A DNA stretch of 64,000 nucleotides, from the IMG/VR virus record IMGVR_UViG_3300035670_000008, positions 62,001-126,000 of that record. One strand, given 5' to 3'. A program made the translations under genes and the position numbers. Of this stretch, positions 27,911 to 53,000 are shown piece after piece (the first letter of the stretch is position 1; every line of letters begins with the position of its first letter). The notes beneath the pieces were generated by a model that was not told the origin of the DNA, searched no databases, and saw nothing but the letters and a program-made list of their open reading frames with translations.

Positions 27911-29269
27911 TTACATAATCCTGGAAGCTCGCTCCGCTAATGCTGACCGCTCGCCCTTGACTAGGGTGATATGGCCTGCCAGCGGGTCACTCTTCCAAGT
28001 GCTGATGGTATAGGCAAGACCATTGCTGTCTGCTTCTAGGTACGGGTCGTCGATTTGCTCGATGTCTCCTAGTAACACAACCTTCGTACCCTCACCAGCC
28101 CGACCGATGATAGTCTTCGCCTCTGCGGGGGTTAAATTGGCTGCTTCATCGATGATGATGAATTTGTTGTTGTAGGTGACCCCTCGAATATAAGCGAGGT
28201 GTTCGCATTGAACGTAGCCGCGCTCCACTAGATATTCGTGGGGCTTAATCGGCTCTTGCTTAGCGCCGGCCTGCTTCGTACTCAGCAACGCATCTAGGCA
28301 AGCGTAGAACGGTTTCATCCAAGGCTCGCTCTTCTCAGAAAGGTCGCCTGGTAGGAAGCCTTCCTTAACGCTGTGGTGGACGTACTTGCGGGCTATCAGA
28401 ATCTGGTCGTATAGCTTAAGGTCTAAGACCGCGTGTAATGCTCCTAGAAGCGTGATAAACGTCTTTCCCGTACCAAGAGACCCATTGATAGTTACAAGCG
28501 GGATGTCGGGGTCTAGAAGCAGCTCTAGAGCCATTTGCTGCTCTCGGTTGCGGGCTCCCTTTGAACCCAACAGCCGACTCCGGTCTGGAATTAAGCGCAC
28601 CTCCGACTCCCCATCGGCGGGGTACTTAACAATCCCCAGCGCGGCATGTTTAGAATCCTCTAAAGACTCTAGATAAAGCAACTCGTTCGGCTGCGCGTCC
28701 CCCTCAAAGTCTAGGATTTTCTCTTTGTAGAGCGTGTCCACAACAGCCCGCTCAACCTGAACCGCGCGGGTGCCTGTATATAAGTCAGTGATACTGACCT
28801 TATCACTCAAGTAATCCTCAACCCGGAGCCCCAAGACGTCTGCCTTCACCCGCAGGTTCAAATCCTTAGTCACTAGGATTACCGGCACTCCATTAGAATC
28901 TAACGACAACCACTTCGTTAATAACAGGAGCCGGTTGTCCGTCTTACTTAAATCAAGCGCGGGGGCTCCAAACCCTAACAAATCCGGCTCCAACGTACCA
29001 AAGTCCCGCGCGGTGGCTACTCTAACAGTCCCACCTTCAGAATTAACTGTAACCCCTTGAGGAGCACCCAAGTCGCCAAGCAACCGTAGCTCCTCCAAAG
29101 TACGGATAGCCTCCCGCGCGGCTACCCCAACCCCATTCCCCGACCGCTGCTTTAAAGTGTCTAACTCCTCAATGACATCCAAAGAGATGACCACCGAGTT
29201 GTCCTTGAAAGACAACACCGCGGCGGGGTCATGTATCAAAACGTTCGTGTCTAAAACAAAATGCTTCAC
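27911..29269 (-). CDS. phoH: PIN-PhoH (PhoH2/YlaK-like) protein
   Basis: VLDTNVL, EELD, DNR, VTKDLNLR; GSLGTGKT, GFLPG, RG, IIDEA, GDIEQID. Confidence 0.93.
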   Translation of the reverse strand: MKHFVLDTNVLIHDPAAVLSFKDNSVVISLDVIEELDTLKQRSGNGVGVAAREAIRTLEELRLLGDLGAPQGVTVNSEGGTVRVATARDFGTLEPDLLGFGAPALDLSKTDNRLLLLTKWLSLDSNGVPVILVTKDLNLRVKADVLGLRVEDYLSDKVSITDLYTGTRAVQVERAVVDTLYKEKILDFEGDAQPNELLYLESLEDSKHAALGIVKYPADGESEVRLIPDRSRLLGSKGARNREQQMALELLLDPDIPLVTINGSLGTGKTFITLLGALHAVLDLKLYDQILIARKYVHHSVKEGFLPGDLSEKSEPWMKPFYACLDALLSTKQAGAKQEPIKPHEYLVERGYVQCEHLAYIRGVTYNNKFIIIDEAANLTPAEAKTIIGRAGEGTKVVLLGDIEQIDDPYLEADSNGLAYTISTWKSDPLAGHITLVKGERSALAERASRIM

Positions 29270-35250: not shown

Positions 35251-35619
35251 CTAGCGGCGGCTGGCTAGCTCGGTAATCTGCAGCTGCAGCTCACCGATTT
35301 TGGCTTCAGCTTCGCGGGCTAGCCGAGCATACTCACCAGCAAGGCGCTGCTGCTCATAACGCTCTTTGAGGAGCTGCTGCAGCTTGCCGTCGTCGGTAAG
35401 CGCCTCGAACTGGTTGAGGATTTCAGCAGACGGAATGAACCGCTTCTTCAAATCCTCTTCGATTGCCTCCACGAACTCGTAGGTATCTTTCAACCCCGAG
35501 TGGAGGGTCTGCCGAAGCAGTTTGGTTGCGCCGAGCTTTTCGCCCTTCGCAACCAGCTCGATGGCTTGAGCAAGTAAATCGTTAGACATACAGTTCTCTC
35601 CTGGTTTGGGTAAGGGCAT
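35251..35619 (-). CDS. Protein with ribosomal L7/L12 C-terminal-like motif (start probably 35589)
   Basis: KLGATKLLRQTLHSGLKDTYEFVE resembles KI.AIK.VR..TGLGLKEAK..VE. Confidence 0.55.
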   Translation of the reverse strand: MPLPKPGENCMSNDLLAQAIELVAKGEKLGATKLLRQTLHSGLKDTYEFVEAIEEDLKKRFIPSAEILNQFEALTDDGKLQQLLKERYEQQRLAGEYARLAREAEAKIGELQLQITELASRR

Positions 35620-36394
35620 ACTCGATTAACTCAACTAGCCGAGGGATATCGTCCGCATCCACCCAAGCAACGTCGTCGTTATGCGGGTAGACCTCCCAGC
35701 AGGCGGTTCCACTGTCGTGGAGCTCGCCAAAGGGGTCATACAACACGGACGCCTCCCCGCCTGTCCCATCTGTGATGAGAAGGCGGACTTCGGCAGTGCG
35801 GTGTGATAACACACTGACCGACCAGCCCGCTTTCATCGGTATAGGTGGGGAGGGAGGACACCGCCGCTCAGGCTCGCGGACGTTGAGGTAGACCTTGGGA
35901 GTCTCCTCCTCTTCTAGGTTGGAGAGGTAGATGTCGAGGTTGGCCTGGTCAGCCTGCCGTTGGAGCTCCTTTTCCAAGGCATCCCAATTGGCTTTCTTGG
36001 CTGCCTCGGCGAGCTGCTCCTCGTAAGCTTCGCGGTCGAGCTCCGCCAGGTATTCCCACTCGGAGAGTTGCTCCTCGTCTTGCAGAAGCCCCTCCTTCCG
36101 CAGCGATTGCTCCTCCTCGAGGTGAGCAGCCCACTCGGGGTCCCAGTAGGGACTGTCCTCACCGTACTCGGTCGGTAGCTCTTCCTCCTCGCAGGAGTAA
36201 TCCCACTCGGGAGGCTGCCCGTAGTTTTCAGCCCAGCCTGTCTCACCAAGCATCAACTGCCCGGCAATGAACTGAGCTAATAACTGAGGAAAGCTAAACG
36301 CCTCCGAACGGTCGTCCGACCAAATGTGCTCAGCACAATTAGTCAGATATTGACAGTCAGGGCCATTACCGTTGTGGTGGCGGATTATAAACAT
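35582..36394 (-). CDS. Highly acidic hypothetical protein
   Basis: AAGGAG RBS; Glu/Asp-rich core. Confidence 0.7.
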   Translation of the reverse strand: MFIIRHHNGNGPDCQYLTNCAEHIWSDDRSEAFSFPQLLAQFIAGQLMLGETGWAENYGQPPEWDYSCEEEELPTEYGEDSPYWDPEWAAHLEEEQSLRKEGLLQDEEQLSEWEYLAELDREAYEEQLAEAAKKANWDALEKELQRQADQANLDIYLSNLEEEETPKVYLNVREPERRCPPSPPIPMKAGWSVSVLSHRTAEVRLLITDGTGGEASVLYDPFGELHDSGTACWEVYPHNDDVAWVDADDIPRLVELIEYALTQTRRELYV

Positions 36395-36427
36395 TACTGT
36401 TCTCCTTTATTTTGGTTAGTGGGTAAA

Positions 36428-36613
36428 AGGTGTAGGTGGGCTTGAACCACCAAGACTCACGGATGACTAGTCCGCTAACAGCTTATTGCAATCTAGTTTC
36501 CACGCCTGCCGATCTGTACGTGGCGCCGGGAATTACCCTCTTACTACGGGAGTCACTCCGCAGCTAGGACAACTAGATTACTCACCGTCCTTACCAATTG
36601 GACGTATGCACCA
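36428..36613 (-). ncRNA. tRNA-like structured RNA with ~115-nt insert in place of the anticodon arm
   Basis: D arm GTCC-AATTGGTAA-GGAC, T arm GGTGG-TTCAAGC-CCACC, imperfect acceptor GGTGCA/TACACC, internal TAATCTAGTT/AACTAGATTG stem. Confidence 0.55.
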
Positions 36614-36742
36614 TCTGCATAACGCGGCACTATCCCCTATGCAGTCTCGGGGCGCCGAATGATACCAGTTTTAAGTCATGAGTGTCATGGACTATAACCC
36701 AGGAGCCATTGCCGAAGCAAGAGGACTATCCTGGGGCGGAGT

Positions 36743-37003
36743 TTAATTGTCCCAGATGTGTTTGGTTTCACCAAGGGCGGCGATAGGGTCGTCATCGCGG
36801 TGGTTAGCGATGTAACGACCGCGGTCGCGGTTGCGTAGGTGAACACCATACTCAGCCATCAACTCTTCGTTGAGGTCATCGACCTCAGCTCGAGCTCGTA
36901 GCTGCGAGTACGTCTGGGGACGTTGTAGAGACCCACCCGGATGTGCCTGCTGGGCGCGGCGGGTCTCCATAATTGAAGGGTAGCTTCGGCGTGTGCGTGC
37001 CAT
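36743..37003 (-). CDS. Small basic hypothetical protein
   Basis: AAGGAGG RBS. Confidence 0.7.
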   Translation of the reverse strand: MARTRRSYPSIMETRRAQQAHPGGSLQRPQTYSQLRARAEVDDLNEELMAEYGVHLRNRDRGRYIANHRDDDPIAALGETKHIWDN

Positions 37004-38438: not shown

Positions 38439-38581
38439 TGGCTCGTTCCTCCTATTTATTAATTCTTCCTTCCTTCTGCTCTTTTCCCCGTGTTATCTGG
38501 CTTATTAGCTTTTTTGTAGCCAACCTACCATACTCCGGGGGCTGTCCGCAAGTAGTAAAAAAGGGGCATAGCCCCAGTGGA

Positions 38582-39466
38582 TTAAACCTCCACAACATTG
38601 AAGGTAGCCACTTCCTCTTCACAGAGAATGACTTCCCAATTCATATCGAAGTCGGTGCGCTCACCTTCCTCAGCGCCACAACCGCACCAACAGTAGTTAG
38701 TGTAGTTAGACATGGTTATCCGGTGCTTAGCCGGATCGAAGGGGCCCCATTTGGCGTGTACGCGATCTTTGGCGTACTTCACCCTAAAACTATGGTCACC
38801 GGTGACCAAAGTATTGGTGTCCTGGAACGGCAGCGCGTAGGCGTGCTGGTACTTGGTTGTATCGACCTCATACCAAATCAGTCCACTTCCGTTCCACTCC
38901 CTGAAAATGGAGAGGTAACGTCGGAGGACAGGGAAGGTGTAGGTCACCTTAACGCTTTCTCCTTCTGCGTTAAGAAAGACGAGTTTGCGTAGGGTTTGAG
39001 CTTTCGCCATGTACCCTTCGGCACGAATCAACACCACCTCGTCAGAGGTATTGATGTGTTGAAGGTACCGCTCATCAGAGCTCCCCTCCGGGTTAATATG
39101 CAGCTCTACGGCGTGCTCGAATCCCAGCGCCTCCATCTGAGCAGCGTGGGCCTTGTTTCGTGGGAATATCACATAAAGACCAGCTAACCAACCATCCTCT
39201 TCGTCCTCCGTATAGGAGTACTCAGAGAAGACTTGTACCCCGCGGTACTTCGTCCAAGCTGGCGCATCCCGGAACACCCGATACATCCACAACGCCTGGT
39301 AGCGCTGGCGGATGTATTCCACCTGGGCATAAAGCCCTAGGAGTACCTGTTCAATTTGACCTAAGAGCTCGCACTCTTGGTCTTGAACATACTCTGCATG
39401 TTGGGCGGCGATGTCACAGACCATCTTCTTATTCTCCAAATTACTACTCCATCCGCTCTTTACCAC
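38582..39466 (-). CDS. Hypothetical protein (true start probably ~39424)
   Basis: Long ORF; class II motif overlaps the annotated start. Confidence 0.7.
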   Translation of the reverse strand: MVKSGWSSNLENKKMVCDIAAQHAEYVQDQECELLGQIEQVLLGLYAQVEYIRQRYQALWMYRVFRDAPAWTKYRGVQVFSEYSYTEDEEDGWLAGLYVIFPRNKAHAAQMEALGFEHAVELHINPEGSSDERYLQHINTSDEVVLIRAEGYMAKAQTLRKLVFLNAEGESVKVTYTFPVLRRYLSIFREWNGSGLIWYEVDTTKYQHAYALPFQDTNTLVTGDHSFRVKYAKDRVHAKWGPFDPAKHRITMSNYTNYCWCGCGAEEGERTDFDMNWEVILCEEEVATFNVVEV

Positions 39467-41065: not shown

Positions 41066-44000
41066 CTATTTGCGGTTGGCTTTCAGCCACGCGAAGTAGT
41101 CGTGGTCTACGAAGCCTTGGCACCCGGTCAGCCAGTTAATTACCCGAGGGTCAGAGCAATCTAAGAAGACGTCCTCGATGCGCTCGAAACGAGACAGCAT
41201 CACATAGAGGGCGGCTACTCGCTGTAACGCCTGCTCTTCGCCTAAGCGGTCTTCGCTAATCGAAATGATGCCAGGGCCTTTAATGGTTAACCCTTGGCAG
41301 CTATTAATCGTAGTCGCGAAATCTGCGTGGAGGGGTAGCTGGATGAACTTACCGCTCAGCGTGCCATCGGAAAAGTGCTTGCCCTCGAACTCATGGCTTT
41401 CAATACGAACGAGCCGATGTCCGAAGTCAACGATGACGTGGTCGTTGCCTAGTGACTTAATCTTGCCCCGACTACCATTAGCGGCCAGCAAGGTCTTGTT
41501 ACCACTTACAAGCTCGTATTTATTGTTACGTAGCTTGACAGGCATGTCAATGGCCAACGTCAAATTGGCAGGGATGGGTCGGAAGTCCCGGAGCCAATTA
41601 TCGTTGGTAGCGCCTTTCCGAATGACTAGACCGTTGTAGGTCTTCTTGGTGGTGACCATCGCCTGGGTATAACGCTCGTTCACTTCAATAACGCGACGGT
41701 TATTGTAGAAGATATGAACAGCGTTCTCAGGCGGGGTGACTACGCCGTTGATGCAGTCAGCAAAACGCTGTGCAATAACCCCAGTAATCATCCCAGTCTC
41801 ACGTAGGATGTCCAGGGCTTCCTGGTAAGCAGGGTCACCTTTCTGACGCACGCCGGTGTTTAGCTCAACGATGCTGAACGGACGGGTGGTTCCGTTGAAA
41901 CCATTGATTAGGCTGCCTTGGTTAGCTTTACAGCCGTTGATGAAGACATCTTGGTAGAACTTCACGGCTTTGTTATCGCTAACCGGCAGCTGACCACCGT
42001 CACCTACGAGCAGGATTTGGGCGAGTGGGTTCAGGCGTTTGATAATGTTGAAGACAACAAACAACACCCGTCCATCCACCATGGATACCTCGTCGATAAC
42101 TACGCGCAAGCGCTGACCGGTCTTGCAGGTCAAGCTTTGCTTAACGTAGTTATTCGTCAGAGACTTCATCACCATCGACTGAGCCCACTGCCAATCGGTG
42201 GTGCCAGGGGTGCGCTTCTCGCTGAAGTCAATACCCAAACCGAAACCACTGTTAAGCGTTCCTAGCGCACCGTAAGCGCCTTCCTGTAGGCTACCGCCGA
42301 GGTTCATCACGGAGATACCCGTAGAACCAAAGACGACGACCTTGTCACCAGCGGCTGCCCAACGGTGGATGGTTTCGGCAGTGATGAAGGTCTTGCCGGT
42401 ACCAGCCTTACCGGTCAAGAAGATGTTGTCACCCTGCTCCACCAGGGCTAAGAACTTTTTTTGACAGCTGGTTAGGTTGTCGATTTCGGCTAGCTCGATA
42501 GGTAAACCGCAGGTGGGTTCAGCGGCAGGAGCTTCGGAGATAGTAGGGATAGAAGGGAGAGTTTGCATAGTAGCCTCAGGGTTAGGAGTTTCTATGCTAT
42601 CTGCTTTTTTCCCTGCTTTCTCTTTACTTTCTTGTAGGTCAGTAATAACCGTTGTGTCAGCTACGCGAGCAATGTTTGCTTTGGAGCCTTTGGAGTGCCC
42701 GTCCCAAATGACGATACTCTTATGGCAACCATCGTGCATGACAGCATCACGTTGCGTATAGCTACCATTTACGCAGATAGTAGGGTAGCCTACGTTATTA
42801 CGACAACGATTTGCGTAGTAAACGGTTACTTCGCAGCCACGTCCTAGCAGATACTGCTGTACAGCAAGGTCAATACCTGTAGCATCACCAACTCGGAATG
42901 TAGCACCGGCTTGGATGTAAGCATCGATCTCTACCTTTGCTTTATCAGGTAGTTCTTTGATCGAACGGCTGCCGGAGACAACTACAACCGCACGCTTTGG
43001 CTCAACTGCTCCATCTATTTCCATTAGTTCGCCAAATATCCAGCAGTCTTTCTCTTCAGACCAATCGTAGAAAAGCTTGGTTACTTCGCCAGTGCTAGCT
43101 AGATAAAGCCAAGAAGCTTCAAACAAATTTACGATGTGCTGGCTGGGGCGGTAGCTAGGTAGTGAGTAATTAACTGCATAGACTACATCCCGAATGGCGT
43201 TCAAGAAGTCGCAGGCCTGTACGTTGTACAACCAAGGATGTTCTATGAAGGCACCTTTAGCTCCATGCTCAATGACGAAGCAGTAAGTGTCAGGGAACAG
43301 GTCGAAGTCTCCAGACCACGGCTGGCTCTGTTTACCGTCATACCAATCCTTGGCTTCTTGTAGTGCCTCGTTGAAACTATCAACAGCCCCTGTATTGCTG
43401 ATATCTGGGTAGCCGTAAAAGTAATCTACTAACCCAGTTTCCCAAAGGTAGACTAGATAATCTTCCTTAGTTAGGCTACATTCGCGGCTGGAGTTGCCAT
43501 AGGAGAATACCAATGTGTTAGCGAAGATATTATCCAGCTCGTCCATTGAGATAATGCCGTTGTGTAGCAGGTCGCCCATGGTACGTTTACCTTCAACGAA
43601 ACTATTAATATACAGCTCGTCGATATAAGGTTTGATACTTTCAACAAAAGCATCAGCAACCTTAATCCGGTTGGCGGTGGGCTTAACCTCTGTAGCTACC
43701 ACATCAATGGTAGCCCCGGAGGGCTCTACAGAAGCAGGGGCCTCTGTAGATTCAGCGGTGGGTTCGGCGTCTACAACGGCAGCGAAGCCGCCATCAGACG
43801 GAGGAGTTGGCTCCTTGGGAGTAGCAGGTACAGACCCACTACCAGAGTCGTCAGAGCCTTCGTCTTCAGGCTTCTCGTCGTTAGATGCCGAACCGTTCGT
43901 CGGCTCAACTCCCAACTGTACAGCCAGAGCAGCTAGCACACGCTCGGCAGCAGCGTCGCCAAACTCAGCCCGCACTTCATCAACGATGGAGCGGACTTTC

Positions 44001-47000
44001 TGTTGGCGAGCGGTGCGTTCGGCTTTAGCGCGCTCTTCTGCTTTAACTTGCTCAGCGATGGCAACCAGCATAGCTACCGTGGCGTCACTCTCAGCGGCGG
44101 CTTCGAGGACATCGACGATAGGCACAGCAGTTACTTCTGCTTCCTCAGCGACCTGGGTAACCACAGGCGTAGGAGCCACGATGGGTGCAGGTGCAGGTGC
44201 AGGTGCAGGTGCAGGTGCAACGGGAGCTGGGGCGGTAGGAGCTGGGTCGATGACCTGCGTAGGGACAGGCGCGCTGCTAGGCTCGAACTTATCAGAAGAC
44301 AGCACTATATCAGGGTCTTCATAGTCGTCGAAGGCGGCTGAGCCTGCAAGGTCTAGCTCTTCTTCATCCCAGCGTCCATCATCCATGCCCTCGAATGGGT
44401 CTTCGTGAGTCAACCCATTGTCGATGACCAACTCGGCTGCTGGTTCATCGTTAGCGGTTGGGGCGGAGGCTTCCGCAGTATTCCAAGAGAGTGCATTGGC
44501 AATCTCCTGAGCAGTCTGGGTAGTCGGGCCGACCTCCATGATTGGTTTAATTTCCATTTCTCCTTCGACCTCTGGAGTAGAATGACGGAGCTCTAGTTTA
44601 TAGCGGAAGTAATCCATGGCGGGACGAGCTCCTGTGTCATCCATGAATTCATAACCGGTGCCAGGTAGGTATTTACATACGTCGCCCAGAACAGATTTCT
44701 GGAACATACGACGTAGTACCCATAGTACATGGGACTCGGTATAGACTTCCTCAGGGATTGTTACACCCGCAACTGGATTACCCAAGGCATACCAGTGGAA
44801 CAACTGACGAGTAACCTGTAGGTGACAGATTACTTTGTTTTCGTCCCAGTCGTTCTCGCCATTGAGGTAGCCTTTGAAGTAACCCACCCATTTGCCGCGG
44901 GTCATTTCAAACTGAGCGAAGGAATTATATTTGATAAATCCTTCTAACCCAACGCTGGCGTCAGCTTCGGTACCGTAGAGCATACCTTTCTCCCATGCTT
45001 TAACTTCGGCTAACAGGTTAAAGCACTCGGCAATCTCCATACCGGCAGTACCGTTACAGCCCATCGCTTCAACAGCCGCGATGAACTCTTCGATGCTCTT
45101 CACATCGTTGTAGCGGAACATCGTGACGTAGTTAGGGCGGGGTACTTTAACACCCAGACCTGTATCTACGAATTCAGGACGGCTGACGGCTTGGACGTAG
45201 TCTACCCACATACGCCAGGTCGGTTTGGTGTAGGCACCGAGAATGGTTTCATAAATCTCAGCTACGATAGCCACGATTTGAAACGCATTATCACTGGCGG
45301 CCCACTTGAGGGAGTCGGGAATCTCAACACCACACTTCTTGAGAGCAGTGACGATGTTGATTACACCTTCGCCGAGCTGATAGATACCGTAGGACACACC
45401 CACCATGGTGGTGAACACTTCGCGGGCGCGAATGTTGGTGTCCGCGTAGCTATCAACCTCAACCTCTTTACCTTTGATGGTGACCTTAATAGGATTGATA
45501 GCACCTTGTAAAGCACCATCTTTCGGGTCAACTTTCACGAAGGAGGAGAGGTTCTCGACGATGCGTAGGCGACTCCAGCCGTTCTTGGGCATCATGTAGT
45601 CACCCCAGTAGCATTCCTTGCGGATGAGGGTAGCCCAAGGAGATTCTCCAGGACGTTGACCCACAGCACCGGCACGGAAGGCAACAGCAGACTCAGCCGT
45701 GGTAACTAGACTGAGTAGCATTTGCAGGGTGTGCCCACATGTCCAGGGCAGGATAACGCCGTAGGTGCCGTCGCCGTCATTATCCCCAGCGGTCATCAAG
45801 TTGTGAGCCAAGGGGCTCATCAACCGGGTAGCGCCGTAGATAACGTCGAGCTGTACGACGGGCTGATTGTTCTCATCCAGCAGAGGCTTACGGTCTTTGT
45901 AGACAATGTAAGTCGGGTCGCTGGGCGCGTAGTAGAACGATTCGATAGCCTTACGGGTGTAGGGCAGAATCGTCACCAAACCAATCGAGCCGTCGGGCAT
46001 AGGCGAACGAGTCTCATGGTTGATGATGGGGGTCGGATACGCAGCTAACCCAAGACGAAGAGCAGTCTCGAACGTGGGGCAGTCCCGGTCAAGGCTATAC
46101 TTAGTCATTTCAGAGGTGAACTGACCAGTAGTAGCATCGAACACAGGGCGCTCGTAGCCACGCACGTACTGTTTCATCAAGTCGTACTGCATACCACCCT
46201 CTACTACTAAGAACATCCAGGTGGGGATGTTGGGTAGCGACAGTGCTTTACCACCAATCATCCGGTCACCACCGATATTCTTGGCGTTGCTGGAAGATTC
46301 GGTGAGGGCACGTAGTTTACCGCGCAGACGGTTGACATCGATGGCGCTCGGTAACTGACCAGCTAGGAGCGTAATCAGATACTGGTAGAAGAAGATGCCA
46401 GATGCTGTCTCTAGGCACTCCTCACCACTCTTCAACGAGTTGAGGTTGAAGAGCATAGGAGTGTAGATATCGATGTGGCGCACGATGTTGGAATCATCGT
46501 ACTCGTCTTCCCACTCATCGTAGTCACAGTCGTAGCTATCGTAGTCCCACTCATAATCCTCGTAGTCGGGAGCCTTCGTTTTGATATGGTCGAAGGTTAA
46601 CTTACGAGGAGTAGAGGTTACAACACGAATCACTACGTTCCGTAGGGCGTGGCAGACCTTACCAAACAGGGCGTCGTCGTCTGGATTGCTGAGGTCTACA
46701 TCAACTAGCAACTCACGGACGCGAGCCATACCTTCTTCATTAGGCACAGCTTCCCAAGATTTAACACCACGGCTAGTAACCTCTTGCCAGTTGGCGAGGG
46801 TGATGGTTTCTAGCAAGGTGGAGTCGTAGTCCATCGAGCCGTCGTACATGGCGCAGAGCAGCTTCGCACGGTAGGGAGATTCCAACGCGCGCACGGCTTG
46901 TCCTTCCATCACTTCACGGATAGCCTTGTTAGGCATCAAGCGATAGTTAGAACGAAGCGCAGCGCCTAGCTGATGAGAATCACCAGCGGCTTCTTCTACA

Positions 47001-50000
47001 GTGCTGCTTTCAAACAACACGACGTCGTAGATGGGGCAGTCGCAATCAGCACGACCAGCCAGCACCCAACCACGCTGCTGCATGACGGAGACGTTTCCGT
47101 CTCCGTTCAGGTGGAACCAGAAGATGTTGGCACGTTCTTCCGCGCGGCTACCTTTGTGGTTTGCAGGGTCGAGGAGGTCTACATCACTCAACACTACGGT
47201 ACGAGTGAAGACTTTGTCTCCCACGATGACCTTGCGGTCGACCACTGGGCCGATGTTGGCAGAGGTGACGTCATACATTAGCCCTTTGGGTTTGCCGTTG
47301 TCGTCCTTGGCATCCACAGCTGCTAGGTACAGTTCGAGTAGTTTGTTACCATACTCGCCGTACTCTAGGTCTGCCCAGGTCACAGTCAGCTGCTGCCCGA
47401 AGAACTCAGCAAACGCCTTCTGTAGCGCATCGTAAGCACCTGAGTTGATACCCACCGGGTCTTCAATGAGATAGTCTAAGTGGCGGCGGCCATCATACTT
47501 CTCATTTAGGTCCATACCCATCTCCCGCAGCGCCAAGAACCGGGGGTCTTGACAGTCTTTGTTGAAGACCAACGTATGGGAGATATAGGGGATATTACAG
47601 TGGGTCGTATCCATCTTCAGAACGTCCTGAGGTAACAACAGCTCAGCAACGCGCGGGCTGATGTTTGGATTATCGTTGTTGAAGATAGACTCGGCGTGCA
47701 TAGACGCGACCATACCTTTGACGACGGAGCTACGAAGCTTACCCCAGTCTTCGGCTTTGGTTACAGCCCACTCGACCACGAACTCAACTGCTTTCGTGCC
47801 AGTCTCTAGCGTGCGGGTGGTATAGGTACGCACCCACTCTAGGTAGCCAGTGAAGTCACGGGTCTGCTTGGCAGCACGAAGGTAGGGCTGATTATCCTTG
47901 AGCTTGGCACCGGTGTTGATTTGAGCCAACACATCGCCCTTGCGGACCAACTGCAGCTCGGTCGGGCGGTAGTAGGTATAGGTGATACCATACTCAACCT
48001 CTGTGGTCTTGGTGTGTTCACACCCCATGAGCACGGTGCCCATGTCAATTACCAGAGGATTTGCCCGATCGAACTTGCTGGAGCGGTAGGACATCTTCTT
48101 GGTAACGAAGCCCCGAGGACGGGAGTATTTGCTACCCAAATGCCACGCCTGACCTGCAATGCCTGTCATGGTCATACCGAGGATGACCTTCTGTAAGGTA
48201 CCTTCCAAGGGTAGGACTTGACCGACTGCCATTGAGCCACCTTTAACCTGATAGAAATCAGGCGGCATGGTACTCATAGCGATGGTGTTAGGCTCGTTGC
48301 CGTAGCCACCCTCTTTGATGAGTCGCTCCAACTCGGGCCGACCCTCGAAGTCAATCACGCAGCCGGAGGGCACAGAGGTAGGAGCTCGTAGGTCAAGACG
48401 CTTCGAGCCCTTCGCCGTCTTGGTGTTCAAGTTGGCGAACATCCAAGCGAGGTCACCACCAAAGCCGTTAGCCTCAGCAACAGCGCGAAGTTCTTCATAC
48501 CACGTGGGCGCCAGGTTTTTCAGGCGACCAAGGTCAACGTGGCAGATGTTGCCGCTACGCGCGGTGCCTTTGTTGAAGGAGAACCCCATGCTGAGCTCAC
48601 CGGTAATCCGGGTGATGAGCATCTGCATGATTTCGGAATCCTTCACCTGACCACGCAGACGGAAGGAGTGATACTCCTTGGTCAGACGGCCAGCGCCAGC
48701 ACCAGCGAAGTCTTTGAATTTGACCTTGCCGTTCTCTACTACCAAGGGCTCAGGATAGTAGACCACCATGTTGTTGTCTTTATCCCGATTCACCATCACA
48801 CCCACGATGCTATAGCTATTAGCTTCAGCATGTAGGGTGGGGCCAGACATGTTCATCGTCCCATCGCTAGTGACAGGGAAGAACTTGTCAGTTTTGGTGT
48901 GGAATGCAGCCAAGTTCGCAGACACGTTCCGTGTGGTAGCAGAGGCAACCAACTGACCGCTGAGTAGGGCGACGTAGCCGTAGTAGAACAGCCGCATGAA
49001 GCCACCGAAGGAATCACAACCCCGGATGGAGTGGATAAGCTTCTGGGACTTCTTGGTCTCAGGGTCACGGTAGTTTTCCCAAACTACTTCGATGACGCCC
49101 TTGAACATACGGTCACGGCGGCCATCAACAACACCCAGTTCAGTCATGCGAAAGTCGAGGCTCTCCTCTAGAACAATCGCATTGTTCTCCCACTTGATGA
49201 ACTGATCAGCGTAGTCCTCACCGATGTAGCTACGAATGATTCGGACCAGTGCCTCAAAATGCACGGGCTTCCATTCGTAACCGGATAAGGAACCAAGGTT
49301 GCCAGCCGGGTCTTTGCCCATACAGGCAGCCAAATACGCATGACACGCGTAGGCCGCAGGACGTAGCCCGTGATTCAACAACGTAGTACCATCTTGCAGG
49401 ACGGTGTTGTTGTTAATCCAGGTGTGGAAGTTGTCCTTGGTATAGGCCTTCCAATCTACGGCTACCAACTCGTCAGTCGTGATTTTCTGAATCGAGTTAT
49501 AGTAGGCGCGCAGTTCAGCCACGCGATCAAGGATGGCTTCTTTGGGGGTGCGGGCGTCAATTGTTACCTCAGGCTCGGTAGCCACAGGTGGGATGACTTC
49601 GATAGGCGCAGGCGCGGGAGCGGCAGGGGGTGGTGTGGTTTCCTGTTCCATAGGCACGGGTTTGCCGGGTAACAAACCACCATGCTCCTCGAAGTACTTG
49701 CAGGTGCGAGTACGTTCAAGGTCGCTCATATCCAGGCGAGGGTCGCCATGGTCCATACGCGGGCTGAATGCGTTGACCGGATACATACCTGTGTAAGGCT
49801 TCTTGTACCGGAGGATGCGCTCACCGTAGACGGTCTCAACCACGGCTTCCAGAGCGGTGGTATCAAAATGGTTGATACCCTTCTGGTCAAACACCCAATC
49901 AGCGGCCTGTAGCAGCGTGATGTTGTTGCAATACATCCGCTGAGAGGTGTGCTGTTGGTCAACACCAGGGGTAAGGTCACCGACCACAGTGTTGTCCTTA

Positions 50001-53000
50001 GCTACAGTCATGCGGCGGAGTTTGCCGCCGAAGACATAGCCAGAGTCCCCTTTGTCCCGGTATTCCCCAAAGCCATGAATAGCGTGAACCTCAGCGATAG
50101 CCACGAACCAGTAGCGTTTGCCTGCCTCTGGCATAGAGGCGATAATACCTTTGGAGTTGATGGTGTTGTAGTCACCAACTGCTTTGGCTCCATTGGTACC
50201 ATTTAGCAACAACTCCTTGAGCGTGCCACGTTGCAAAGTCGCTTCGGTGGAGGCAGCACTATCCACAAAGGAGGTACAACGTACCTTACCTTCCTCTTTG
50301 TTCAGCTGGGCATACACCAACTGAACTTGAACGTTGCGGATGTGCTGGTTACGATACCAGCCGCTGGTACCATAGAAGCCGCCAGCGCAGGTGGGAGCAC
50401 CTTTCTGGTAGCTACGAGCCGCAAAGAACAAGACGGGCTCGACCTCACCCATCATATTACCGAGGGAGCCGAAGTTCAGCTTAGCTTCTTCAGGTGCTAA
50501 GTCTGGGGCTCCCAATTTCAAGAAGGAGTTCTCGTTAGTAAACTGTTCCCGCACAGGCAGGTTCAGATTACTTTCTATTATTTCCCCGTCTGCGTTACGT
50601 CGCATACCAACGAGGTAGACAGCGTAACCCAGGGTGTACTCGTTCATACCGGCGGCAGCATTAGCCAGCTCGGCCACAAACTCGCAACCGGGGAAGCATT
50701 CGATTAAAGAGTTGAGCATATTCCCTCCTTTACTATGCTCTCCGTTTGCTTTTTTCCCCGTATTCGTGGAACACGGTGGGGAAGCAGGTGTGGTACCTGC
50801 CGCAACACCCGATTGTTCGGGAACCCCATGGCTGAAGGCCACGTAGTCGGCCACTATACCAGATTTGGTCTTGCCGAGCGTAGCTTTAGCTTCAAGCAGA
50901 TACTGCTTAAAGCCGGCGTTGATAGCCCGGTCAGCCTCCAAATCCATGGCCCAACGAGCGAAGGACTCAACTACTACCTCTTCTTCTCGTTTTTCCTGTT
51001 TGTAGCTTGCAATCCAAGCTTTAGGAATATTACGGAAGTACTTGCGGGCGAAGCCATTCCCTTTAAGGCTGAGGTAGCCATGGAAGTGGAGGTAGTGACC
51101 AAACTCATGAAAGAGAGTCTTGGTCATCTCACGGGCGTTTCCTTCACCCCGCTTCACGATATAAATCGTGTTGGGCGCGGCAAACGAACCGTTGACCTCT
51201 TCGTGGCCGGTGTAGCGGCGGGCCATGGCGTAATCCATTTCATCGTCACGGTCAGCGACGATGATATTAACGCTAAAGCTGTCTTCTAACCAGTTACGCC
51301 ACTGGTAGAAGCGTTCCATACCAGCGGGGTTGTTATCAATCTTAGCTACGTCAATCTTATGGACAGCACAAATGCCAGGCTCTTTAGTTGTGGGGGCCTC
51401 GAACTCTTTAGCCATCTTGTAGATAACAGCTTCATCTACTTGACGAATCCGTTGCTTTTGACGTGCGCAGGCGAGTTCTGGTGTTCCTTGCAGCCAATGA
51501 ACCTCCCAATGACCTTTGCCTGCTTCGGTAATACGTCGGCGCCATTTAGAGTTAGAGTTACAGCCGTCGTAAACGATTTGCATTCCTAGCTTATTAGCGG
51601 CGGCAAACTGCTCTTGGATGTAAGTCCAAACTACTTCGATATCACCCTCTACTAAATCGGTGCCATAGATTTCTTTCTTGGCTGTGTCCCAATCGATGTA
51701 GTAGTAATCTTTGAAGTTTTCTTTAGCGTAGGTAGACTTACCTAACCCAGGCAACCCAACTAACATTATGTGGGTCTTAGGTTTAATACCTTGGCATAAA
51801 ACAATAGCTTCATCATGTGCAGCTACGTTAGCTAAATGCTCAGGCAGCGCCTTGCCTTTACCAATAGTACGCACATGCCGTGCCACATAATCATTAACCC
51901 GGCCAGCCTTAGGAGACACACGCACCGGAAAAGCTTTCATTTTGAAAGCCAACCCAGCATACATCTTGTCGCACTGCATCGTGTAGCGCATCCAATTGTA
52001 TGTTGTAAACTTATCCCGGTCGGTTTCATACTTGAAGGTATGGCTTAAGCAGAATGCCCGCACACCACCAGGGGTTTCATACACCTTAAACAAGTAGTCT
52101 GGGTTGTTCTTACACCAGTCGTGTAGTAAAGCATAGGCCTGACAGCGGTGGTTAATGGTAATACACTCCTCGGTATAGTGCCCATCGTCAGGGATATCCC
52201 AATCAAGCATCATTGTGTTTGATTCCCAGAAATAAATCTGCTTCTCTAGAGACAAGTCTTCAAGACGAAGAGCCATCTCTAGTTCACCAGCAGCACCGTA
52301 CTCGCTACGGGCGGCGGTGAGTACTTCTTGGGTAGAGCTGGCGATGTATGGGAGCTCGAATCCCGTGGCGCCCAACTGCCACGCAAACAGCTCGTCCATA
52401 ACCTCAGCCGCCTGTTCGTAGGCAGCCTGGGCCAGCATCAGCTGGTGATAATCCTCCTTCCACTCTTCGAGTGGGTCATACTTGGACTCATCAAAGTCCT
52501 CCTCGTATTCGTCGTCATACTCTTTTTCTTCCTCGTCGTCATACCCGTACAGGGTATCGTCGTAGAAGGCCAGCTTGGGCTCCTGGCGTTTGATGCCACC
52601 ATAGAGGTGGTTGAGGGCGCTGTGGCCATCAGCGCGCCGGTTGTATTTACCCTCCGCGATTAAGCGGCGGTAGTGAATAGACAAAGGCAGCTCTTCCTCA
52701 GTCCGCTGGGTGCGGAACTTGCCAGCTTTGGCTACGGGTGCCTCTGCCCCGGTAGCTAACTGGAACCGGGAGTTTCCTCGCCGGGTAGCGATTGACTTCA
52801 TCGCCCGCGTAACAGGCATAACGGGCAGCTGCCGGGATTTGGGTGGGGTCACCACTTTATAAGTGGTAATTTTGACTACCTGACCACCGCGATGCGCGTA
52901 GATGCGCAACCACTCGGAGTAGCCAAGCCGGTCGGCTTTCCAGACCGATTTAATTTTGCGCTGCTTACGTGCAGCAGCGCGTTGTTGGGTTGTCAGAGGA

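What the first reader, a model, noticed from the sequence alone, without database searches (positions are those of the whole stretch)
36428..36740. tRNA-shaped RNA with a large multi-hairpin domain replacing the anticodon arm
Seen: canonical-looking D and T arms ~120 nt apart. They enclose a 10-bp stem (TAATCTAGTT/AACTAGATTG) that closes three small hairpins, followed by a variable-arm-like CGGA/TCCG stem, with more hairpins upstream. It is too short for a group I intron or tmRNA. Inference: a new tRNA-mimic ncRNA, such as an anticodon-nuclease decoy or RNase P/Z processing signal.
Basis: partly seen in the sequence, partly recalled or inferred. Interest (0 to 1): 0.65.

Follow-up and report, generated by a model that had tools for sequence, protein, structure and literature searches.

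The report
Phage tRNA-like RNA with inserted domain
A small clade of giant phages carries a conserved non-coding RNA built like a tRNA, but with a 110-130-base folded domain wedged between the D arm and the anticodon arm and an 'anticodon' loop that can pair with a loop of that domain; it is a real, previously undescribed tRNA-derived RNA whose job is still unknown.

Summary
Window 36613-36427 folds into a 7-bp acceptor stem, a D arm, a T arm and a 5-bp hairpin, plus a 109-nt domain closed by an 11-bp helix. Rfam has no match, and default ARAGORN calls nothing.

I found three further variants in syntenic phage contigs (L004/L005, L007, L008). In the four core helices, 12 of 22 pairs change on both sides and 97.7% of cells stay paired (0 of 500 shuffles). 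The flanking proteins are only 28-65% identical.

The "variable-arm-like" hairpin is the anticodon arm. The large domain is inserted between G26 and G27 and does not replace that arm. Deleting it in silico gives a cloverleaf that ARAGORN calls at default settings as tRNA-Thr(AGU) or tRNA-Ala(AGC).

The 7-nt "anticodon" loop is complementary to the loop of the insertion's first hairpin in every lineage (5, 4 and 7 nt), with one compensatory switch. It also has a pyrimidine at position 37, and the variable loop is 7 nt.

Best reading: a tRNA-derived, non-decoding tRNA mimic, probably matured by RNase P, RNase Z and CCA addition. Its function is untested. It is a new variant of a known kind.

The parts
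36427..36613 (-). Whole tRNA-like RNA (predicted mature body, 187 nt without CCA): acceptor 5' strand through discriminator U36427
   Evidence: Sequence; MFE fold; CM R1 hit at 241 bits, the only copy in the 216-kb genome; homologues in L004/L005, L007 and L008
36607..36613 (-). Acceptor stem, 5' strand (UGGUGCA). It pairs with 36434-36428. In the window, U1.U72 and C6.A67 are mismatched.
   Evidence: Relatives have perfect 7-bp stems: AGGUGCA/UGCACCU (L004, L007) and ACCUCGG/CCGAGGU (L008). 5 of 7 pairs change on both sides.
36586..36604 (-). D arm: 5-bp stem CGUCC/GGACG with a canonical loop AAUUGGUAA (A14, G18 G19, A21). It is preceded by U8 A9 (36606-36605) and followed by G26 (36585).
   Evidence: Invariant in all four lineages, including the 3' flank GGUG
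36476..36584 (-). Inserted structured domain (109 nt) between G26 and G27. An 11-bp closing helix (36581-36571 / 36498-36488) is followed by 3 bp and three hairpins: H1 36564-36543, H2 36538-36528, H3 36526-36502. A 12-nt linker AAUAAGCUGUUA (36487-36476) ends the domain.
   Evidence: MFE folds. The G.U pairs become A-U in L004 at 36489 and 36561. The insertion is about 110, 128 and 108 nt in the homologues; sequences are unrelated, but each has a closing helix and a first hairpin.
36550..36557 (-). Loop of hairpin H1 (AGUGACUC). UGACU is complementary to AGUCA in the anticodon-like loop, giving a proposed kissing-loop, codon-like element (ACU).
   Evidence: Complementarity is kept in every lineage: 5 nt (window/L004), 4 nt (L007, UAGC:GCUA), 7 nt (L008, UUAGUCA:UGACUAA). 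There is one compensatory switch, U36-A to C36-G. Chance per lineage is 0.018, 0.17 and 0.0014. This is inferred, not probed.
36459..36475 (-). Anticodon-arm homologue: stem GCGGA/UCCGU (G27.U43) and 7-nt loop CUAGUCA (36470-36464; U33, 'anticodon' AGU, C37)
   Evidence: 4 of 5 stem pairs change on both sides among homologues, and G.U is invariant. It aligns to the anticodon arm of an ordinary tRNA-Asn(GUU). ARAGORN reads it as the anticodon arm once the insertion is removed.
36435..36451 (-). T arm GGUGG-UUCAAGC-CCACC, preceded by a 7-nt variable loop GAGUCUU (36458-36452)
   Evidence: The T loop UUCRAxY is canonical. The stem is rewritten in relatives (GCGGA/UCCGC, GCAGG/CCUGC), with 3 of 5 pairs changing on both sides. 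Homology with L004 breaks exactly at 36451.
36424..36434 (-). Acceptor 3' strand UACACCU (36434-36428), discriminator U (36427) and UUU trailer (36426-36424). No CCA is encoded.
   Evidence: N73 followed by UUU is present in all four homologues. The phage's own tRNA-Ala also lacks an encoded CCA.
36698..36735 (-). Conserved upstream hairpin A (CCCAGGA...UUGC-UUCG-GCAA...UCCUGGG), starting 8 nt after the stop codon of the 86-aa ORF. It may be part of the precursor, or a terminator or processing hairpin.
   Evidence: 37 of 37 nt are identical in L004. Changes in L004 and L007 are G.U-compatible. L008 has a hairpin with the same CCAGGR/YCCUGG stem.
36659..36688 (-). Sigma-70-like promoter match (ATGACA, 18 nt, TG-TATCAT). 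It is doubtful.
   Evidence: 10 of 12 matches. However, the -10 is TGTTGT in L004/L007 and abuts the acceptor stem, so this promoter is not conserved.
36615..36660 (-). Window-specific block of about 45 nt of hairpins between the conserved upstream block and the 5' end of the tRNA-like RNA
   Evidence: Absent from L004 and L007
36743..37003 (-). Upstream 86-aa Arg-rich ORF. It is the best-conserved neighbour and a candidate partner or co-transcribed gene.
   Evidence: 53-73% identity across four contigs, always directly upstream of the RNA. No family match. The structure model has low confidence.
35582..36394 (-). Downstream 270-aa acidic ORF with an AAGGAG Shine-Dalgarno (36407-36402) 7 nt before the ATG. 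It starts 33 nt after the RNA's discriminator.
   Evidence: ORF list and sequence. There is no terminator between the RNA and the ORF. The downstream ORFs of relatives are barely related.

Best explanation
This is a tRNA-derived, non-decoding tRNA-like non-coding RNA. It is conserved in a small clade of jumbo phages from subsurface and freshwater samples.

Architecture:
- It keeps a complete tRNA 'top half': a 7-bp acceptor stem, U8, a D arm with G18 G19, and a T arm with UUCRA. This half forms the elbow.
- It keeps a true anticodon-arm homologue.
- A 110-130-nt structured domain is inserted between positions 26 and 27.
- The loop of the domain's first hairpin carries a codon-like sequence. 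This sequence can pair with the 'anticodon' loop by 4-7 bp (a kissing loop), which would lock that loop.

Inferred life cycle:
- It is transcribed on the minus strand together with its neighbours.
- It is cut out by RNase P at the 5' end and by RNase Z at the 3' end (U-rich trailer, no encoded CCA).
- It then receives CCA from the host enzyme.
- This leaves a stable RNA of about 190 nt. The same cuts give the downstream mRNA a defined 5' end.

Inferred function:
- The anticodon loop is masked, position 37 is a pyrimidine, and a bulky domain sits at the hinge. It should therefore not decode on the ribosome.
- I think it most likely acts in trans as a tRNA mimic that engages a tRNA-recognising factor, such as a processing or modification enzyme, a synthetase, a defence nuclease or the ribosome.

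What is shown: the structure, its conservation and its tRNA ancestry.
What is inferred: the processing, the kissing loop and the mimic role.
For: 1. Real and conserved.
- CM R1 finds one copy per phage contig, in the same syntenic slot, in L004/L005 (244 bits), L007 (75 bits, E 4e-23) and L008 (29 bits, E 3e-8).
- The core is about 96% identical between the window and L004. Flanking proteins are only 28-65% identical. Most neighbouring DNA aligns at 82% identity or less, or not at all.

2. Covariation.
- Acceptor stem: 5 of 7 pairs change on both sides.
- Anticodon-like stem: 4 of 5. T stem: 3 of 5.
- 97.7% of cells are paired, 0 of 500 shuffles reach this, and slid controls give 36-52%.

3. 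tRNA hallmarks are present: U8, A14, G18 G19, A21, U54 U55 C56 R57 A58.

4. tRNA ancestry and topology.
- With the insertion deleted in silico, ARAGORN at default settings calls tRNA-Thr(AGU) (window, L004) and tRNA-Ala(AGC) (L007).
- The 3' half aligns to an ordinary phage tRNA-Asn with the same anticodon stem.

5. Not a decoder.
- Position 37 is C or U.
- The variable loop is 7 nt and the D stem is 5 bp.
- The insertion sits at the hinge.
- The 'anticodon' differs between lineages (AGU against AGC).

6. Kissing loop.
- The anticodon-like loop and the H1 loop are complementary in every lineage.
- There is one compensatory switch, and the pairing is extended in L008.

7. Non-coding. No frame is conserved, and the insertion lengths (110, 128, 108 nt) differ by non-multiples of 3.

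8. Processing context.
- N73 followed by UUU, with no CCA, occurs in all four.
- The phage's tRNA-Ala also lacks an encoded CCA.
- There is no terminator before the downstream Shine-Dalgarno and ORF.

9. Transcription hint. A freshwater metatranscriptome library holds a 908-nt contig covering the unspliced element. It ends 4 nt into the T stem, whereas the DNA contigs run on.
Against: - Only four distinct sequences, from three well-separated lineages, are available. They were aligned with a model built from two of them, which biases pair counts towards the model.
- No discrete transcript, ends, CCA or modification has been shown. Logan contigs cannot show RNA ends, and the RNA-library contig could come from carried-over DNA.
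- The kissing loop rests on short complementarities (4-7 nt). The loops share ancestry, so the lineages are not independent.
- The window copy has two mismatches in the acceptor stem. Its T arm looks swapped in by recombination, so this particular copy could be impaired.
- The fold z-score is modest (-1.75).
- No partner protein has been identified.
- The phage encodes no CCA-adding enzyme, RtcB, RNA ligase, Ro or reverse transcriptase that would point to a pathway.
Confidence: 0.55

Rival explanations
1. It is a purely cis-acting element. The tRNA-like fold serves as 'punctuation': RNase P and RNase Z cut the polycistronic transcript between the 86-aa ORF and the downstream ORF. Alternatively it acts as a stabilising or regulatory 5' UTR. 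The excised RNA would have no function of its own.
For: - The element always lies between the conserved small ORF and an ORF with a strong Shine-Dalgarno, 25-150 nt downstream, on the same strand, with no terminator.
- No conserved promoter of its own was found.
- The RNA-library contig continues 660 nt upstream.
- The U-rich trailer fits RNase Z.
Against: - By established knowledge, RNase P and RNase Z need only the acceptor/T minihelix and the elbow.
- That requirement does not explain the maintained anticodon arm, the structured insertion with its closing helix in every lineage, or the preserved loop-loop complementarity.
- The downstream ORFs are not conserved between lineages. The RNA is conserved.
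Confidence: 0.2
2. It is a genuine decoding tRNA gene, Thr(AGU) or Ala(AGC), interrupted by a new kind of intron at position 26/27. The intron pairs with the anticodon, as eukaryal and archaeal tRNA introns do, and is removed to give a 77-80-nt tRNA.
For: - In-silico removal of the insertion gives cloverleaves that ARAGORN accepts at default thresholds.
- The insertion varies in size and sequence, as introns do, while the 'exons' are conserved.
- Its first hairpin is complementary to the anticodon loop.
Against: - There is no group I or group II signature and no ribozyme match, at E up to 10, in any homologue.
- There is no bulge-helix-bulge at the boundaries. The closing helix is 11 bp and uninterrupted.
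- The phage has no splicing endonuclease, RtcB or RNA ligase.
- Position 37 is a pyrimidine, and A34 anticodons are unusual in bacteria (established knowledge).
- The variable loop is 7 nt.
- The anticodon identity changes between sister phages.
- Only the unspliced form appears in the RNA-library contigs, with no joint across 36585/36475. This is weak, because contigs drop rare or short forms.
Confidence: 0.12
3. It is a decaying tRNA pseudogene hit by an insertion, or a chance arrangement of hairpins, with no RNA-level function.
For: - The window copy has two acceptor mismatches and an apparently swapped T arm.
- The fold z-score is only -1.75.
- ARAGORN finds it only at relaxed settings.
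Against: - Compensatory changes occur in three stems across lineages whose proteins have diverged to 28-65% identity.
- Relatives have perfect acceptor stems.
- Every lineage keeps a closing helix for an otherwise unrelated insertion.
- The D arm is invariant.
Confidence: 0.04
4. It is a miniature tmRNA-like or aminoacylated rescue RNA: a tRNA-like domain plus an internal message.
For: The layout has free acceptor ends, a T arm and a long helix leading into a multi-hairpin domain. This is superficially like a tmRNA tRNA-like domain followed by P2.
Against: - There is no tmRNA hit from ARAGORN or from any Rfam tmRNA model.
- It has G3-C70 or C3-G70, not G3.U70.
- It has a true D stem and a true anticodon arm, which tmRNA lacks.
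- No tag-like reading frame is conserved.
- The insertion sequence is not conserved.
Confidence: 0.03

Closest known systems
Canonical elongator tRNA (Rfam RF00005), especially phage tRNAs such as tRNA-Asn(GUU) or tRNA-Thr
   Same: - 7-bp acceptor stem, U8, D loop with G18 G19, and T loop UUCRA.
- 5-bp anticodon stem with a 7-nt loop and U33.
- No encoded CCA, like the phage's own tRNA-Ala.
- The anticodon stem GCGGA/UCCGU is identical to that of a phage tRNA-Asn.
- A cloverleaf is recovered once the insertion is removed.
   Different: - A 110-130-nt structured insertion sits between positions 26 and 27.
- The D stem is 5 bp and the variable loop is 7 nt.
- Position 37 is a pyrimidine.
- The 'anticodon' is not conserved and is complementary to an internal loop.
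- RF00005 gives no hit at E up to 10, and default ARAGORN gives no call.
Intron-containing pre-tRNAs (bacterial group I introns in anticodon loops; archaeal or eukaryal protein-spliced introns with anticodon-intron pairing)
   Same: - A tRNA gene is interrupted by a variable, structured segment.
- That segment can base-pair with the anticodon loop.
   Different: - The position is 26/27, not the anticodon loop.
- There is no group I core and no bulge-helix-bulge.
- No splicing enzymes are present.
- About 110 nt is too small for known self-splicing introns.
tmRNA (SsrA)
   Same: - It has tRNA-like ends with a T arm.
- A long helix leads to a multi-hairpin domain.
- Some large phages encode one.
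   Different: - tmRNA has no D stem and no anticodon arm.
- tmRNA carries G3.U70 and a tag ORF.
- tmRNA is about 360 nt.
- None of these tmRNA features is met here.
Bacterial and phage Y RNA-like YrlA (PMC4201824: 'Bacterial noncoding Y RNAs are widespread and mimic tRNAs')
   Same: - It is a non-decoding ncRNA whose module mimics the tRNA acceptor, T and D arms.
- Versions are found in phages.
- It is thought to engage tRNA-recognising enzymes.
   Different: - YrlA is circularly permuted relative to a tRNA. Its ends lie in the Ro-binding stem that replaces the anticodon stem, and its gene is linked to rsr (Ro).
- Here the ends are at the acceptor stem and an anticodon arm is present.
- There is no TROVE/Ro gene in the phage and no Rfam YrlA hit.
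T-box Stem I-tRNA complex and the CrPV IGR IRES pseudoknot I (anticodon-codon mimicry)
   Same: A codon-like triplet in a structured RNA pairs with an anticodon loop: ACU with AGU, and GCU with AGC. In L007 and L008 the triplet is followed by an A opposite U33.
   Different: - Here both partners are in one molecule that also carries a full tRNA top half.
- There is no T-box or IRES model hit.
- The resemblance is functional and recalled from general knowledge. Homology was not tested.
Phage T4 small stable RNAs (species 1 and 2, rnaC/rnaD) in the tRNA cluster (recalled from the literature, not checked here)
   Same: They are phage-encoded stable RNAs with tRNA-like termini, matured by the tRNA-processing machinery, and their function is unknown.
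   Different: There is no sequence relation. The T4 RNAs lie in a tRNA gene cluster and are not known to carry a full cloverleaf with an inserted domain.

Membership tests
tRNA (RF00005) | Scores above the family threshold with the covariance model, or is called by tRNA finders | tested here: not met
   RF00005 gives no hit at E up to 10 in the window, L004, L007 or L008. ARAGORN at default settings finds nothing, even with introns allowed. Only relaxed settings give a dubious 'Pyl(CUA) + 91-nt intron' call.
tRNA (RF00005) | Cloverleaf core: 7-bp acceptor stem, D arm with G18 G19, 5-bp anticodon stem with a 7-nt loop and U33, T arm with UUCRA | tested here: met
   All are present and covarying. 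ARAGORN at default settings calls the core once the insertion is deleted in silico.
tRNA (RF00005) | Decoding-competent anticodon loop (purine at position 37, free loop) and a compact hinge (one nucleotide between the D and anticodon stems) | tested here: not met
   Position 37 is C or U. There are 108-128 nt between the D and anticodon stems. The loop is complementary to an internal hairpin loop.
tRNA (RF00005) | Aminoacylation and use on the ribosome | not testable with these tools
   Needs charging assays and ribosome profiling.
tmRNA (RF00023 and permuted variants) | tRNA-like domain with G3.U70, no anticodon arm, a tag reading frame and pseudoknots | tested here: not met
   No Rfam or ARAGORN tmRNA call at this locus. 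Position 3-70 is G-C or C-G. No frame is conserved.
Group I intron in a tRNA gene (RF00028) | Conserved P3-P9 catalytic core, insertion in the anticodon loop, length of at least about 200 nt | tested here: not met
   No RF00028 hit at E up to 10 in four homologues. The insertion is 108-128 nt and lies at 26/27.
Archaeal-type (bulge-helix-bulge) tRNA intron | Two 3-nt bulges separated by a 4-bp helix at the exon-intron boundaries, with a splicing endonuclease and ligase available | tested here: not met
   The closing helix is 11 uninterrupted bp. The phage has no tRNA_int_endo, RtcB or RNA_ligase domain. The host is unknown.
YrlA / bacterial Y RNA | Ro-binding stem formed by the 5' and 3' ends, a permuted tRNA-like module, and linkage to rsr | tested here: not met
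   The ends form the acceptor stem. The genome has no TROVE domain. There is no Rfam hit.
T-box leader (RF00230) | Stem I with a specifier loop, and an antiterminator or antisequestrator with a T-box bulge that binds the tRNA 3' end | tested here: not met
   There is no RF00230 hit at E up to 10. There is no terminator or antiterminator downstream.

The most novel reading that the evidence does not exclude
The RNA is a self-contained mimic of a tRNA bound to its codon. It combines a full tRNA top half with an anticodon stem-loop locked onto an internal codon-like loop. Phages would use it to occupy a site that normally accepts tRNA paired with mRNA or a specifier, such as a ribosomal tRNA site (as IRES pseudoknot I does) or a tRNA-sensing host factor, and so reprogramme or shield translation during infection. 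That would be a new class of phage ncRNA, and the first natural tRNA with a functional domain inserted at position 26/27.
Probability: 0.12. Interest if true: 0.9.

Novelty: new variant of a known kind. Interest (0 to 1): 0.68.

Why it matters
tRNA mimics such as tmRNA, YrlA, viral tRNA-like structures and mascRNA have each revealed how cells and viruses reuse the tRNA-recognition machinery. This would add a phage-borne family with an unprecedented layout: an intact cloverleaf with a large structured domain at the D/anticodon hinge, and an apparently self-masked anticodon loop.

It shows that tRNA finders and Rfam miss conserved tRNA-derived RNAs in jumbo phages. It gives a concrete, testable structure (compensatory mutants of the two loops). 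It may also point to a new way for phages to engage host tRNA enzymes, tRNA-targeting defences or ribosomes.

If instead it proves to be a spliced tRNA, it would be a new intron type in the bacterial virosphere, which would also be notable.

Tried and rejected
Searches that found nothing:
- Rfam at gathering and at E up to 10 on the window and three homologues gave only noise far below threshold.
- ARAGORN tmRNA and intron modes gave nothing at default settings. The relaxed 'tRNA-Pyl(CUA) with 91-nt intron' call needs a very weak anticodon stem.
- DNA searches for relatives all came back empty: phages blastn, exact T-arm and D-arm patterns in IMG/VR, and a 24-mer in metagenomes.
- A degenerate D-arm pattern over metagenome, viral and GTDB genome collections returned only the L007 record.
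- Protein-anchored searches with the 270-aa, 86-aa and 269-aa neighbours in IMG/VR and GTDB found no relatives.
- Distant homologues of the HTH protein (P0006-P0008 contigs) carry no copy of the RNA.

Readings rejected:
- Amber suppressor. The phage ends 58 of 182 long ORFs with TAG, and coding density is normal under code 11. I therefore did not name another genetic code.
- Sigma-70 promoter at 36688-36659 as the RNA's own promoter. It is not conserved and would start inside the acceptor stem in the relatives.
- Enzyme context in the phage genome. There is no CCA-adding enzyme, RtcB, Ro/TROVE, splicing endonuclease, RNA ligase, tRNA-ligase CPD or reverse transcriptase. The CPD control search rang nowhere, so that one result is uninformative.
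- VIPR guide-RNA arrays, seen in a literature hit. They are unrelated, because this locus has no GGYNN repeats.
- Literature searches found no description of such an RNA.

Attempts that gave no usable result:
- The structure model of the 86-aa neighbour had pLDDT 55, too poor for a fold search. The Atlas look-up gave no lead.
- The inner parts of the insertion (H2, H3) could not be aligned reliably between lineages. I make no claim about them beyond a closing helix and a first hairpin.
Full report
**Where it is.** The window is bases 62001-126000 of a 216,563-bp IMG/VR virus record, which CheckV rates 96% complete. The record is a jumbo phage from subsurface metagenomes. It encodes a tail fibre, a DNA polymerase, a PhoH-like protein and a TnpB-like transposase, plus three ordinary tRNAs: Ala, Met and Trp. 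It uses the standard code. ORFs of at least 150 codons cover 85% of the genome under code 11, and 58 of 182 long ORFs end in TAG.

The finding lies in a 348-nt gap between two minus-strand ORFs. One runs 36743-37003 (86 aa). The other runs 35582-36394 (270 aa) and has an AAGGAG box 7 nt before its ATG.

**Checking the observation.** Read on the minus strand, the region contains the following:
- acceptor 5' strand UGGUGCA (36613-36607), then U8 A9
- D arm CGUCC-AAUUGGUAA-GGACG (36604-36586), then G26
- an 11-bp helix (36581-36571 with 36498-36488) that closes three hairpins
- a 12-nt linker
- hairpin GCGGA-CUAGUCA-UCCGU (36475-36459)
- a 7-nt variable loop
- T arm GGUGG-UUCAAGC-CCACC (36451-36435)
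- acceptor 3' strand UACACCU (36434-36428)
- U73, then UUU

RNAfold returns this layout as the minimum-energy fold, but the z-score is only -1.75. Rfam has no match at gathering thresholds or at E up to 10. ARAGORN finds nothing at default settings, even with introns or tmRNA allowed. With relaxed thresholds it offers an unconvincing 'tRNA-Pyl(CUA) with a 91-nt intron'. That reading is also incompatible with the phage's frequent use of TAG stops. On this sequence alone, the case would be open.

**Relatives.** Direct DNA searches and exact-pattern scans found nothing. Laying public runs on the region did find something. A 21.9-kb freshwater contig matches 36451-36612 with six differences in 162 nt. 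It also matches 36696-36732 perfectly. The flanks do not reach 80% identity.

I recovered that contig and a 121-kb JGI contig through the neighbouring 269-aa protein (L005 and L004). They are identical across the element. Through the neighbouring 251-aa protein I found two more phage contigs, L007 and L008.

A covariance model built from the window and L004 (R1) hits L007 at 75 bits (E 4e-23). It hits L008 at 29 bits (E 3e-8). In all contigs the element sits in the same slot, directly after the homologue of the 86-aa ORF. There is a single copy in the window's genome.

Proteins flanking the element are 28-65% identical between the window and L004. Blastn finds the RNA locus among the few DNA segments that still align. 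A degenerate D-arm pattern scanned over the metagenome, viral and GTDB collections returned only the L007 record. The family therefore looks confined to this rare clade.

**Covariation.** Pairs were counted on the four sequences aligned to the model (A7). Across the four core helices, 97.7% of cells are standard pairs, and 12 of 22 pairs change on both sides. None of 500 shuffles reaches this, and sliding the partners gives 36-52% paired.
- Acceptor stem: AGGUGCA/UGCACCU in L004 and L007, and ACCUCGG/CCGAGGU in L008.
- Small hairpin stem: GCGGA/UCCGU, GCGAA/UUCGU, GGUUGG/CCAACU and GUAAAG/CUUUAU.
- T stem: GGUGG/CCACC, GCGGA/UCCGC and GCAGG/CCUGC.

Between the window and L004, two substitutions inside the insertion turn G.U pairs into A-U pairs, at 36489 and 36561. 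The alignment was fitted to the model, which favours it. Even so, the stems have been rewritten wholesale, and the relatives' acceptor stems are perfect.

No reading frame is conserved, and insertion lengths differ by non-multiples of three. This is a real, selected, structured non-coding RNA.

**Correcting the topology.** Three results say otherwise.
1. The small hairpin has the anatomy of an anticodon arm: a 5-6-bp stem, an invariant G27.U43, and a 7-nt loop with U at position 33.
2. I deleted the segment between G26 and G27 in a script. ARAGORN at default thresholds then calls a regular cloverleaf: tRNA-Thr(AGU) for the window and L004, and tRNA-Ala(AGC) for L007. L008 is not called.
3. The 3' half of model R1 aligns at 18.8 bits to an ordinary tRNA-Asn(GUU) of Burkholderia phage FLC9. 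That tRNA has the same anticodon stem, GCGGA/UCCGU.

The RNA is therefore a tRNA derivative with a 108-128-nt structured insertion at the D/anticodon hinge. Each lineage closes the insertion with its own helix of 6-16 bp, and a first hairpin (H1) follows the helix. The rest cannot be aligned.

**Why it is unlikely to decode.**
- Position 37 is a pyrimidine.
- The variable loop is 7 nt and the D stem is 5 bp.
- The 'anticodon' differs between sister phages.
- A bulky domain sits at the hinge.
- The 7-nt loop is complementary to the H1 loop in every lineage.

The loop complementarities are AGUCA:UGACU in the window and L004, UAGC:GCUA in L007, and UUAGUCA:UGACUAA in L008. The change of position 36 from U to C in L007 is matched by A to G in H1. 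The internal 'codon' therefore follows the 'anticodon': ACU with AGU, and GCU with AGC.

Chance expectations per lineage are 0.018, 0.17 and 0.0014. The lineages are not independent, so I rate this kissing loop as plausible (about 0.6) and not shown.

**Likely maturation.** All four copies end with a discriminator followed by UUU and carry no CCA. The phage's own tRNA-Ala also lacks an encoded CCA. By established knowledge of bacterial tRNA maturation, such precursors are cut by RNase Z after the discriminator and then extended by the CCA-adding enzyme. RNase P makes the 5' end. The phage encodes no CCA-adding enzyme, so the host's would be used.

No terminator separates the RNA from the downstream Shine-Dalgarno and ORF. 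The sigma-70-like promoter at 36688-36659 is not conserved. In L004 and L007 the -10 hexamer abuts the acceptor stem. The RNA is therefore probably excised from a longer transcript.

A conserved hairpin with a UUCG tetraloop (36735-36698) lies upstream and may belong to that precursor.

A freshwater metatranscriptome library holds a 908-nt contig that covers the unspliced element. It stops 4 nt into the T stem, whereas the DNA contigs continue. This fits transcription and a 3' boundary nearby. However, contigs cannot establish RNA ends, and DNA carry-over is not excluded.

**Function.** I commit to a non-decoding tRNA mimic that is matured like a tRNA and acts in trans on a tRNA-recognising factor (confidence about 0.55 for the whole statement). 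The structural and evolutionary parts are much firmer than the functional part.

The D arm with its 3' flank is invariant, while every other stem has been rewritten. This hints at sequence-specific recognition there or a tertiary contact with the insertion. It remains unexplained.

Rivals:
- A purely cis-acting processing or UTR element (0.2). This does not explain the maintained anticodon arm, the insertion or the loop complementarity.
- A real tRNA with a new intron at 26/27 (0.12). There is no ribozyme core, no bulge-helix-bulge, no splicing enzymes in the phage and no spliced joint seen.
- A pseudogene or chance arrangement (0.04). Covariation contradicts this.
- A tmRNA-like RNA (0.03). 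It lacks G3.U70 and a tag frame, and no model hits it.

**This copy.** The window's version carries U1.U72 and C6.A67 in the acceptor stem. Homology with L004 breaks exactly at the first base of the T stem. Its T arm is identical over 20 nt to T arms of unrelated phage tRNAs. This suggests a recombinational swap of the 3' end. Whether this copy is fully functional is open.

**Comparison with known systems, and novelty.** It works like the known tRNA mimics (tmRNA, YrlA, viral tRNA-like structures). It fails the defining tests of each family, and of tRNA itself (see the membership table).

I found no description of a tRNA-like RNA with a structured insertion at position 26/27 or with an internal codon-like partner. 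The library searched does not hold all journals. I class it as a new variant of a known kind.

Noticed in passing
window 36743-37003 (-); L004:4881-5144, L007:4321-4587, L008:1143-1367: An 86-aa Arg-rich protein (MARTxRSY..., GVRLRNRDRGR, ETKHIW) always lies directly upstream of the RNA. It is the best-conserved neighbour (53-73% identity). It has no family match and only a poor structure model. It could be an RNA-binding partner.
   Followed up: partly
window 10895-12103 (-): A 402-aa IS200/IS605-type TnpB-like transposase (phrog_506, E 2e-93) sits inside the jumbo phage. Its omega-RNA and element ends were not examined.
   Followed up: no
window 41066-53785 (-): A giant 4239-aa ORF. Its homologues in related contigs (4119-4182 aa) carry NADAR and PIF1/AAA_30 helicase domains.
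   Followed up: no
window 38552-39449 vs L007:2417-3317: 904 nt of DNA (the 294-aa ORF 38582-39466) are 82% identical to L007. This is far above the neighbouring genes and may reflect recent exchange or strong constraint.
   Followed up: no
genome C1:207266-207719 (outside the window): ARAGORN reports a permuted 'tmRNA*' that overlaps the tRNA-Met and tRNA-Trp genes. It is almost certainly a false positive.
   Followed up: partly
window 36615-36660 (-): A window-specific block of about 45 nt of GC-rich hairpins lies between the conserved upstream block and the 5' end of the tRNA-like RNA. It is absent from L004 and L007.
   Followed up: partly
L013:495-1235 (-): In an unrelated Logan contig, a distant homologue of the 269-aa HTH/ANT-like neighbour sits next to a gene with a tRNA-ligase cyclic-phosphodiesterase domain (PF08302). 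No copy of the RNA is present there.
   Followed up: partly
window 27911-29269 (-); L007:12044-13435: The PhoH-like protein of this clade carries an N-terminal PIN_4 domain in the relative (a PhoH2-type RNA helicase/RNase architecture). It lies about 7 kb from the RNA.
   Followed up: no
L004:4500-4880 (-): The relative has about 380 nt of extra non-coding sequence between the small ORF and the conserved upstream hairpin. It has no Rfam match, and the RNA-library contig covers it.
   Followed up: partly
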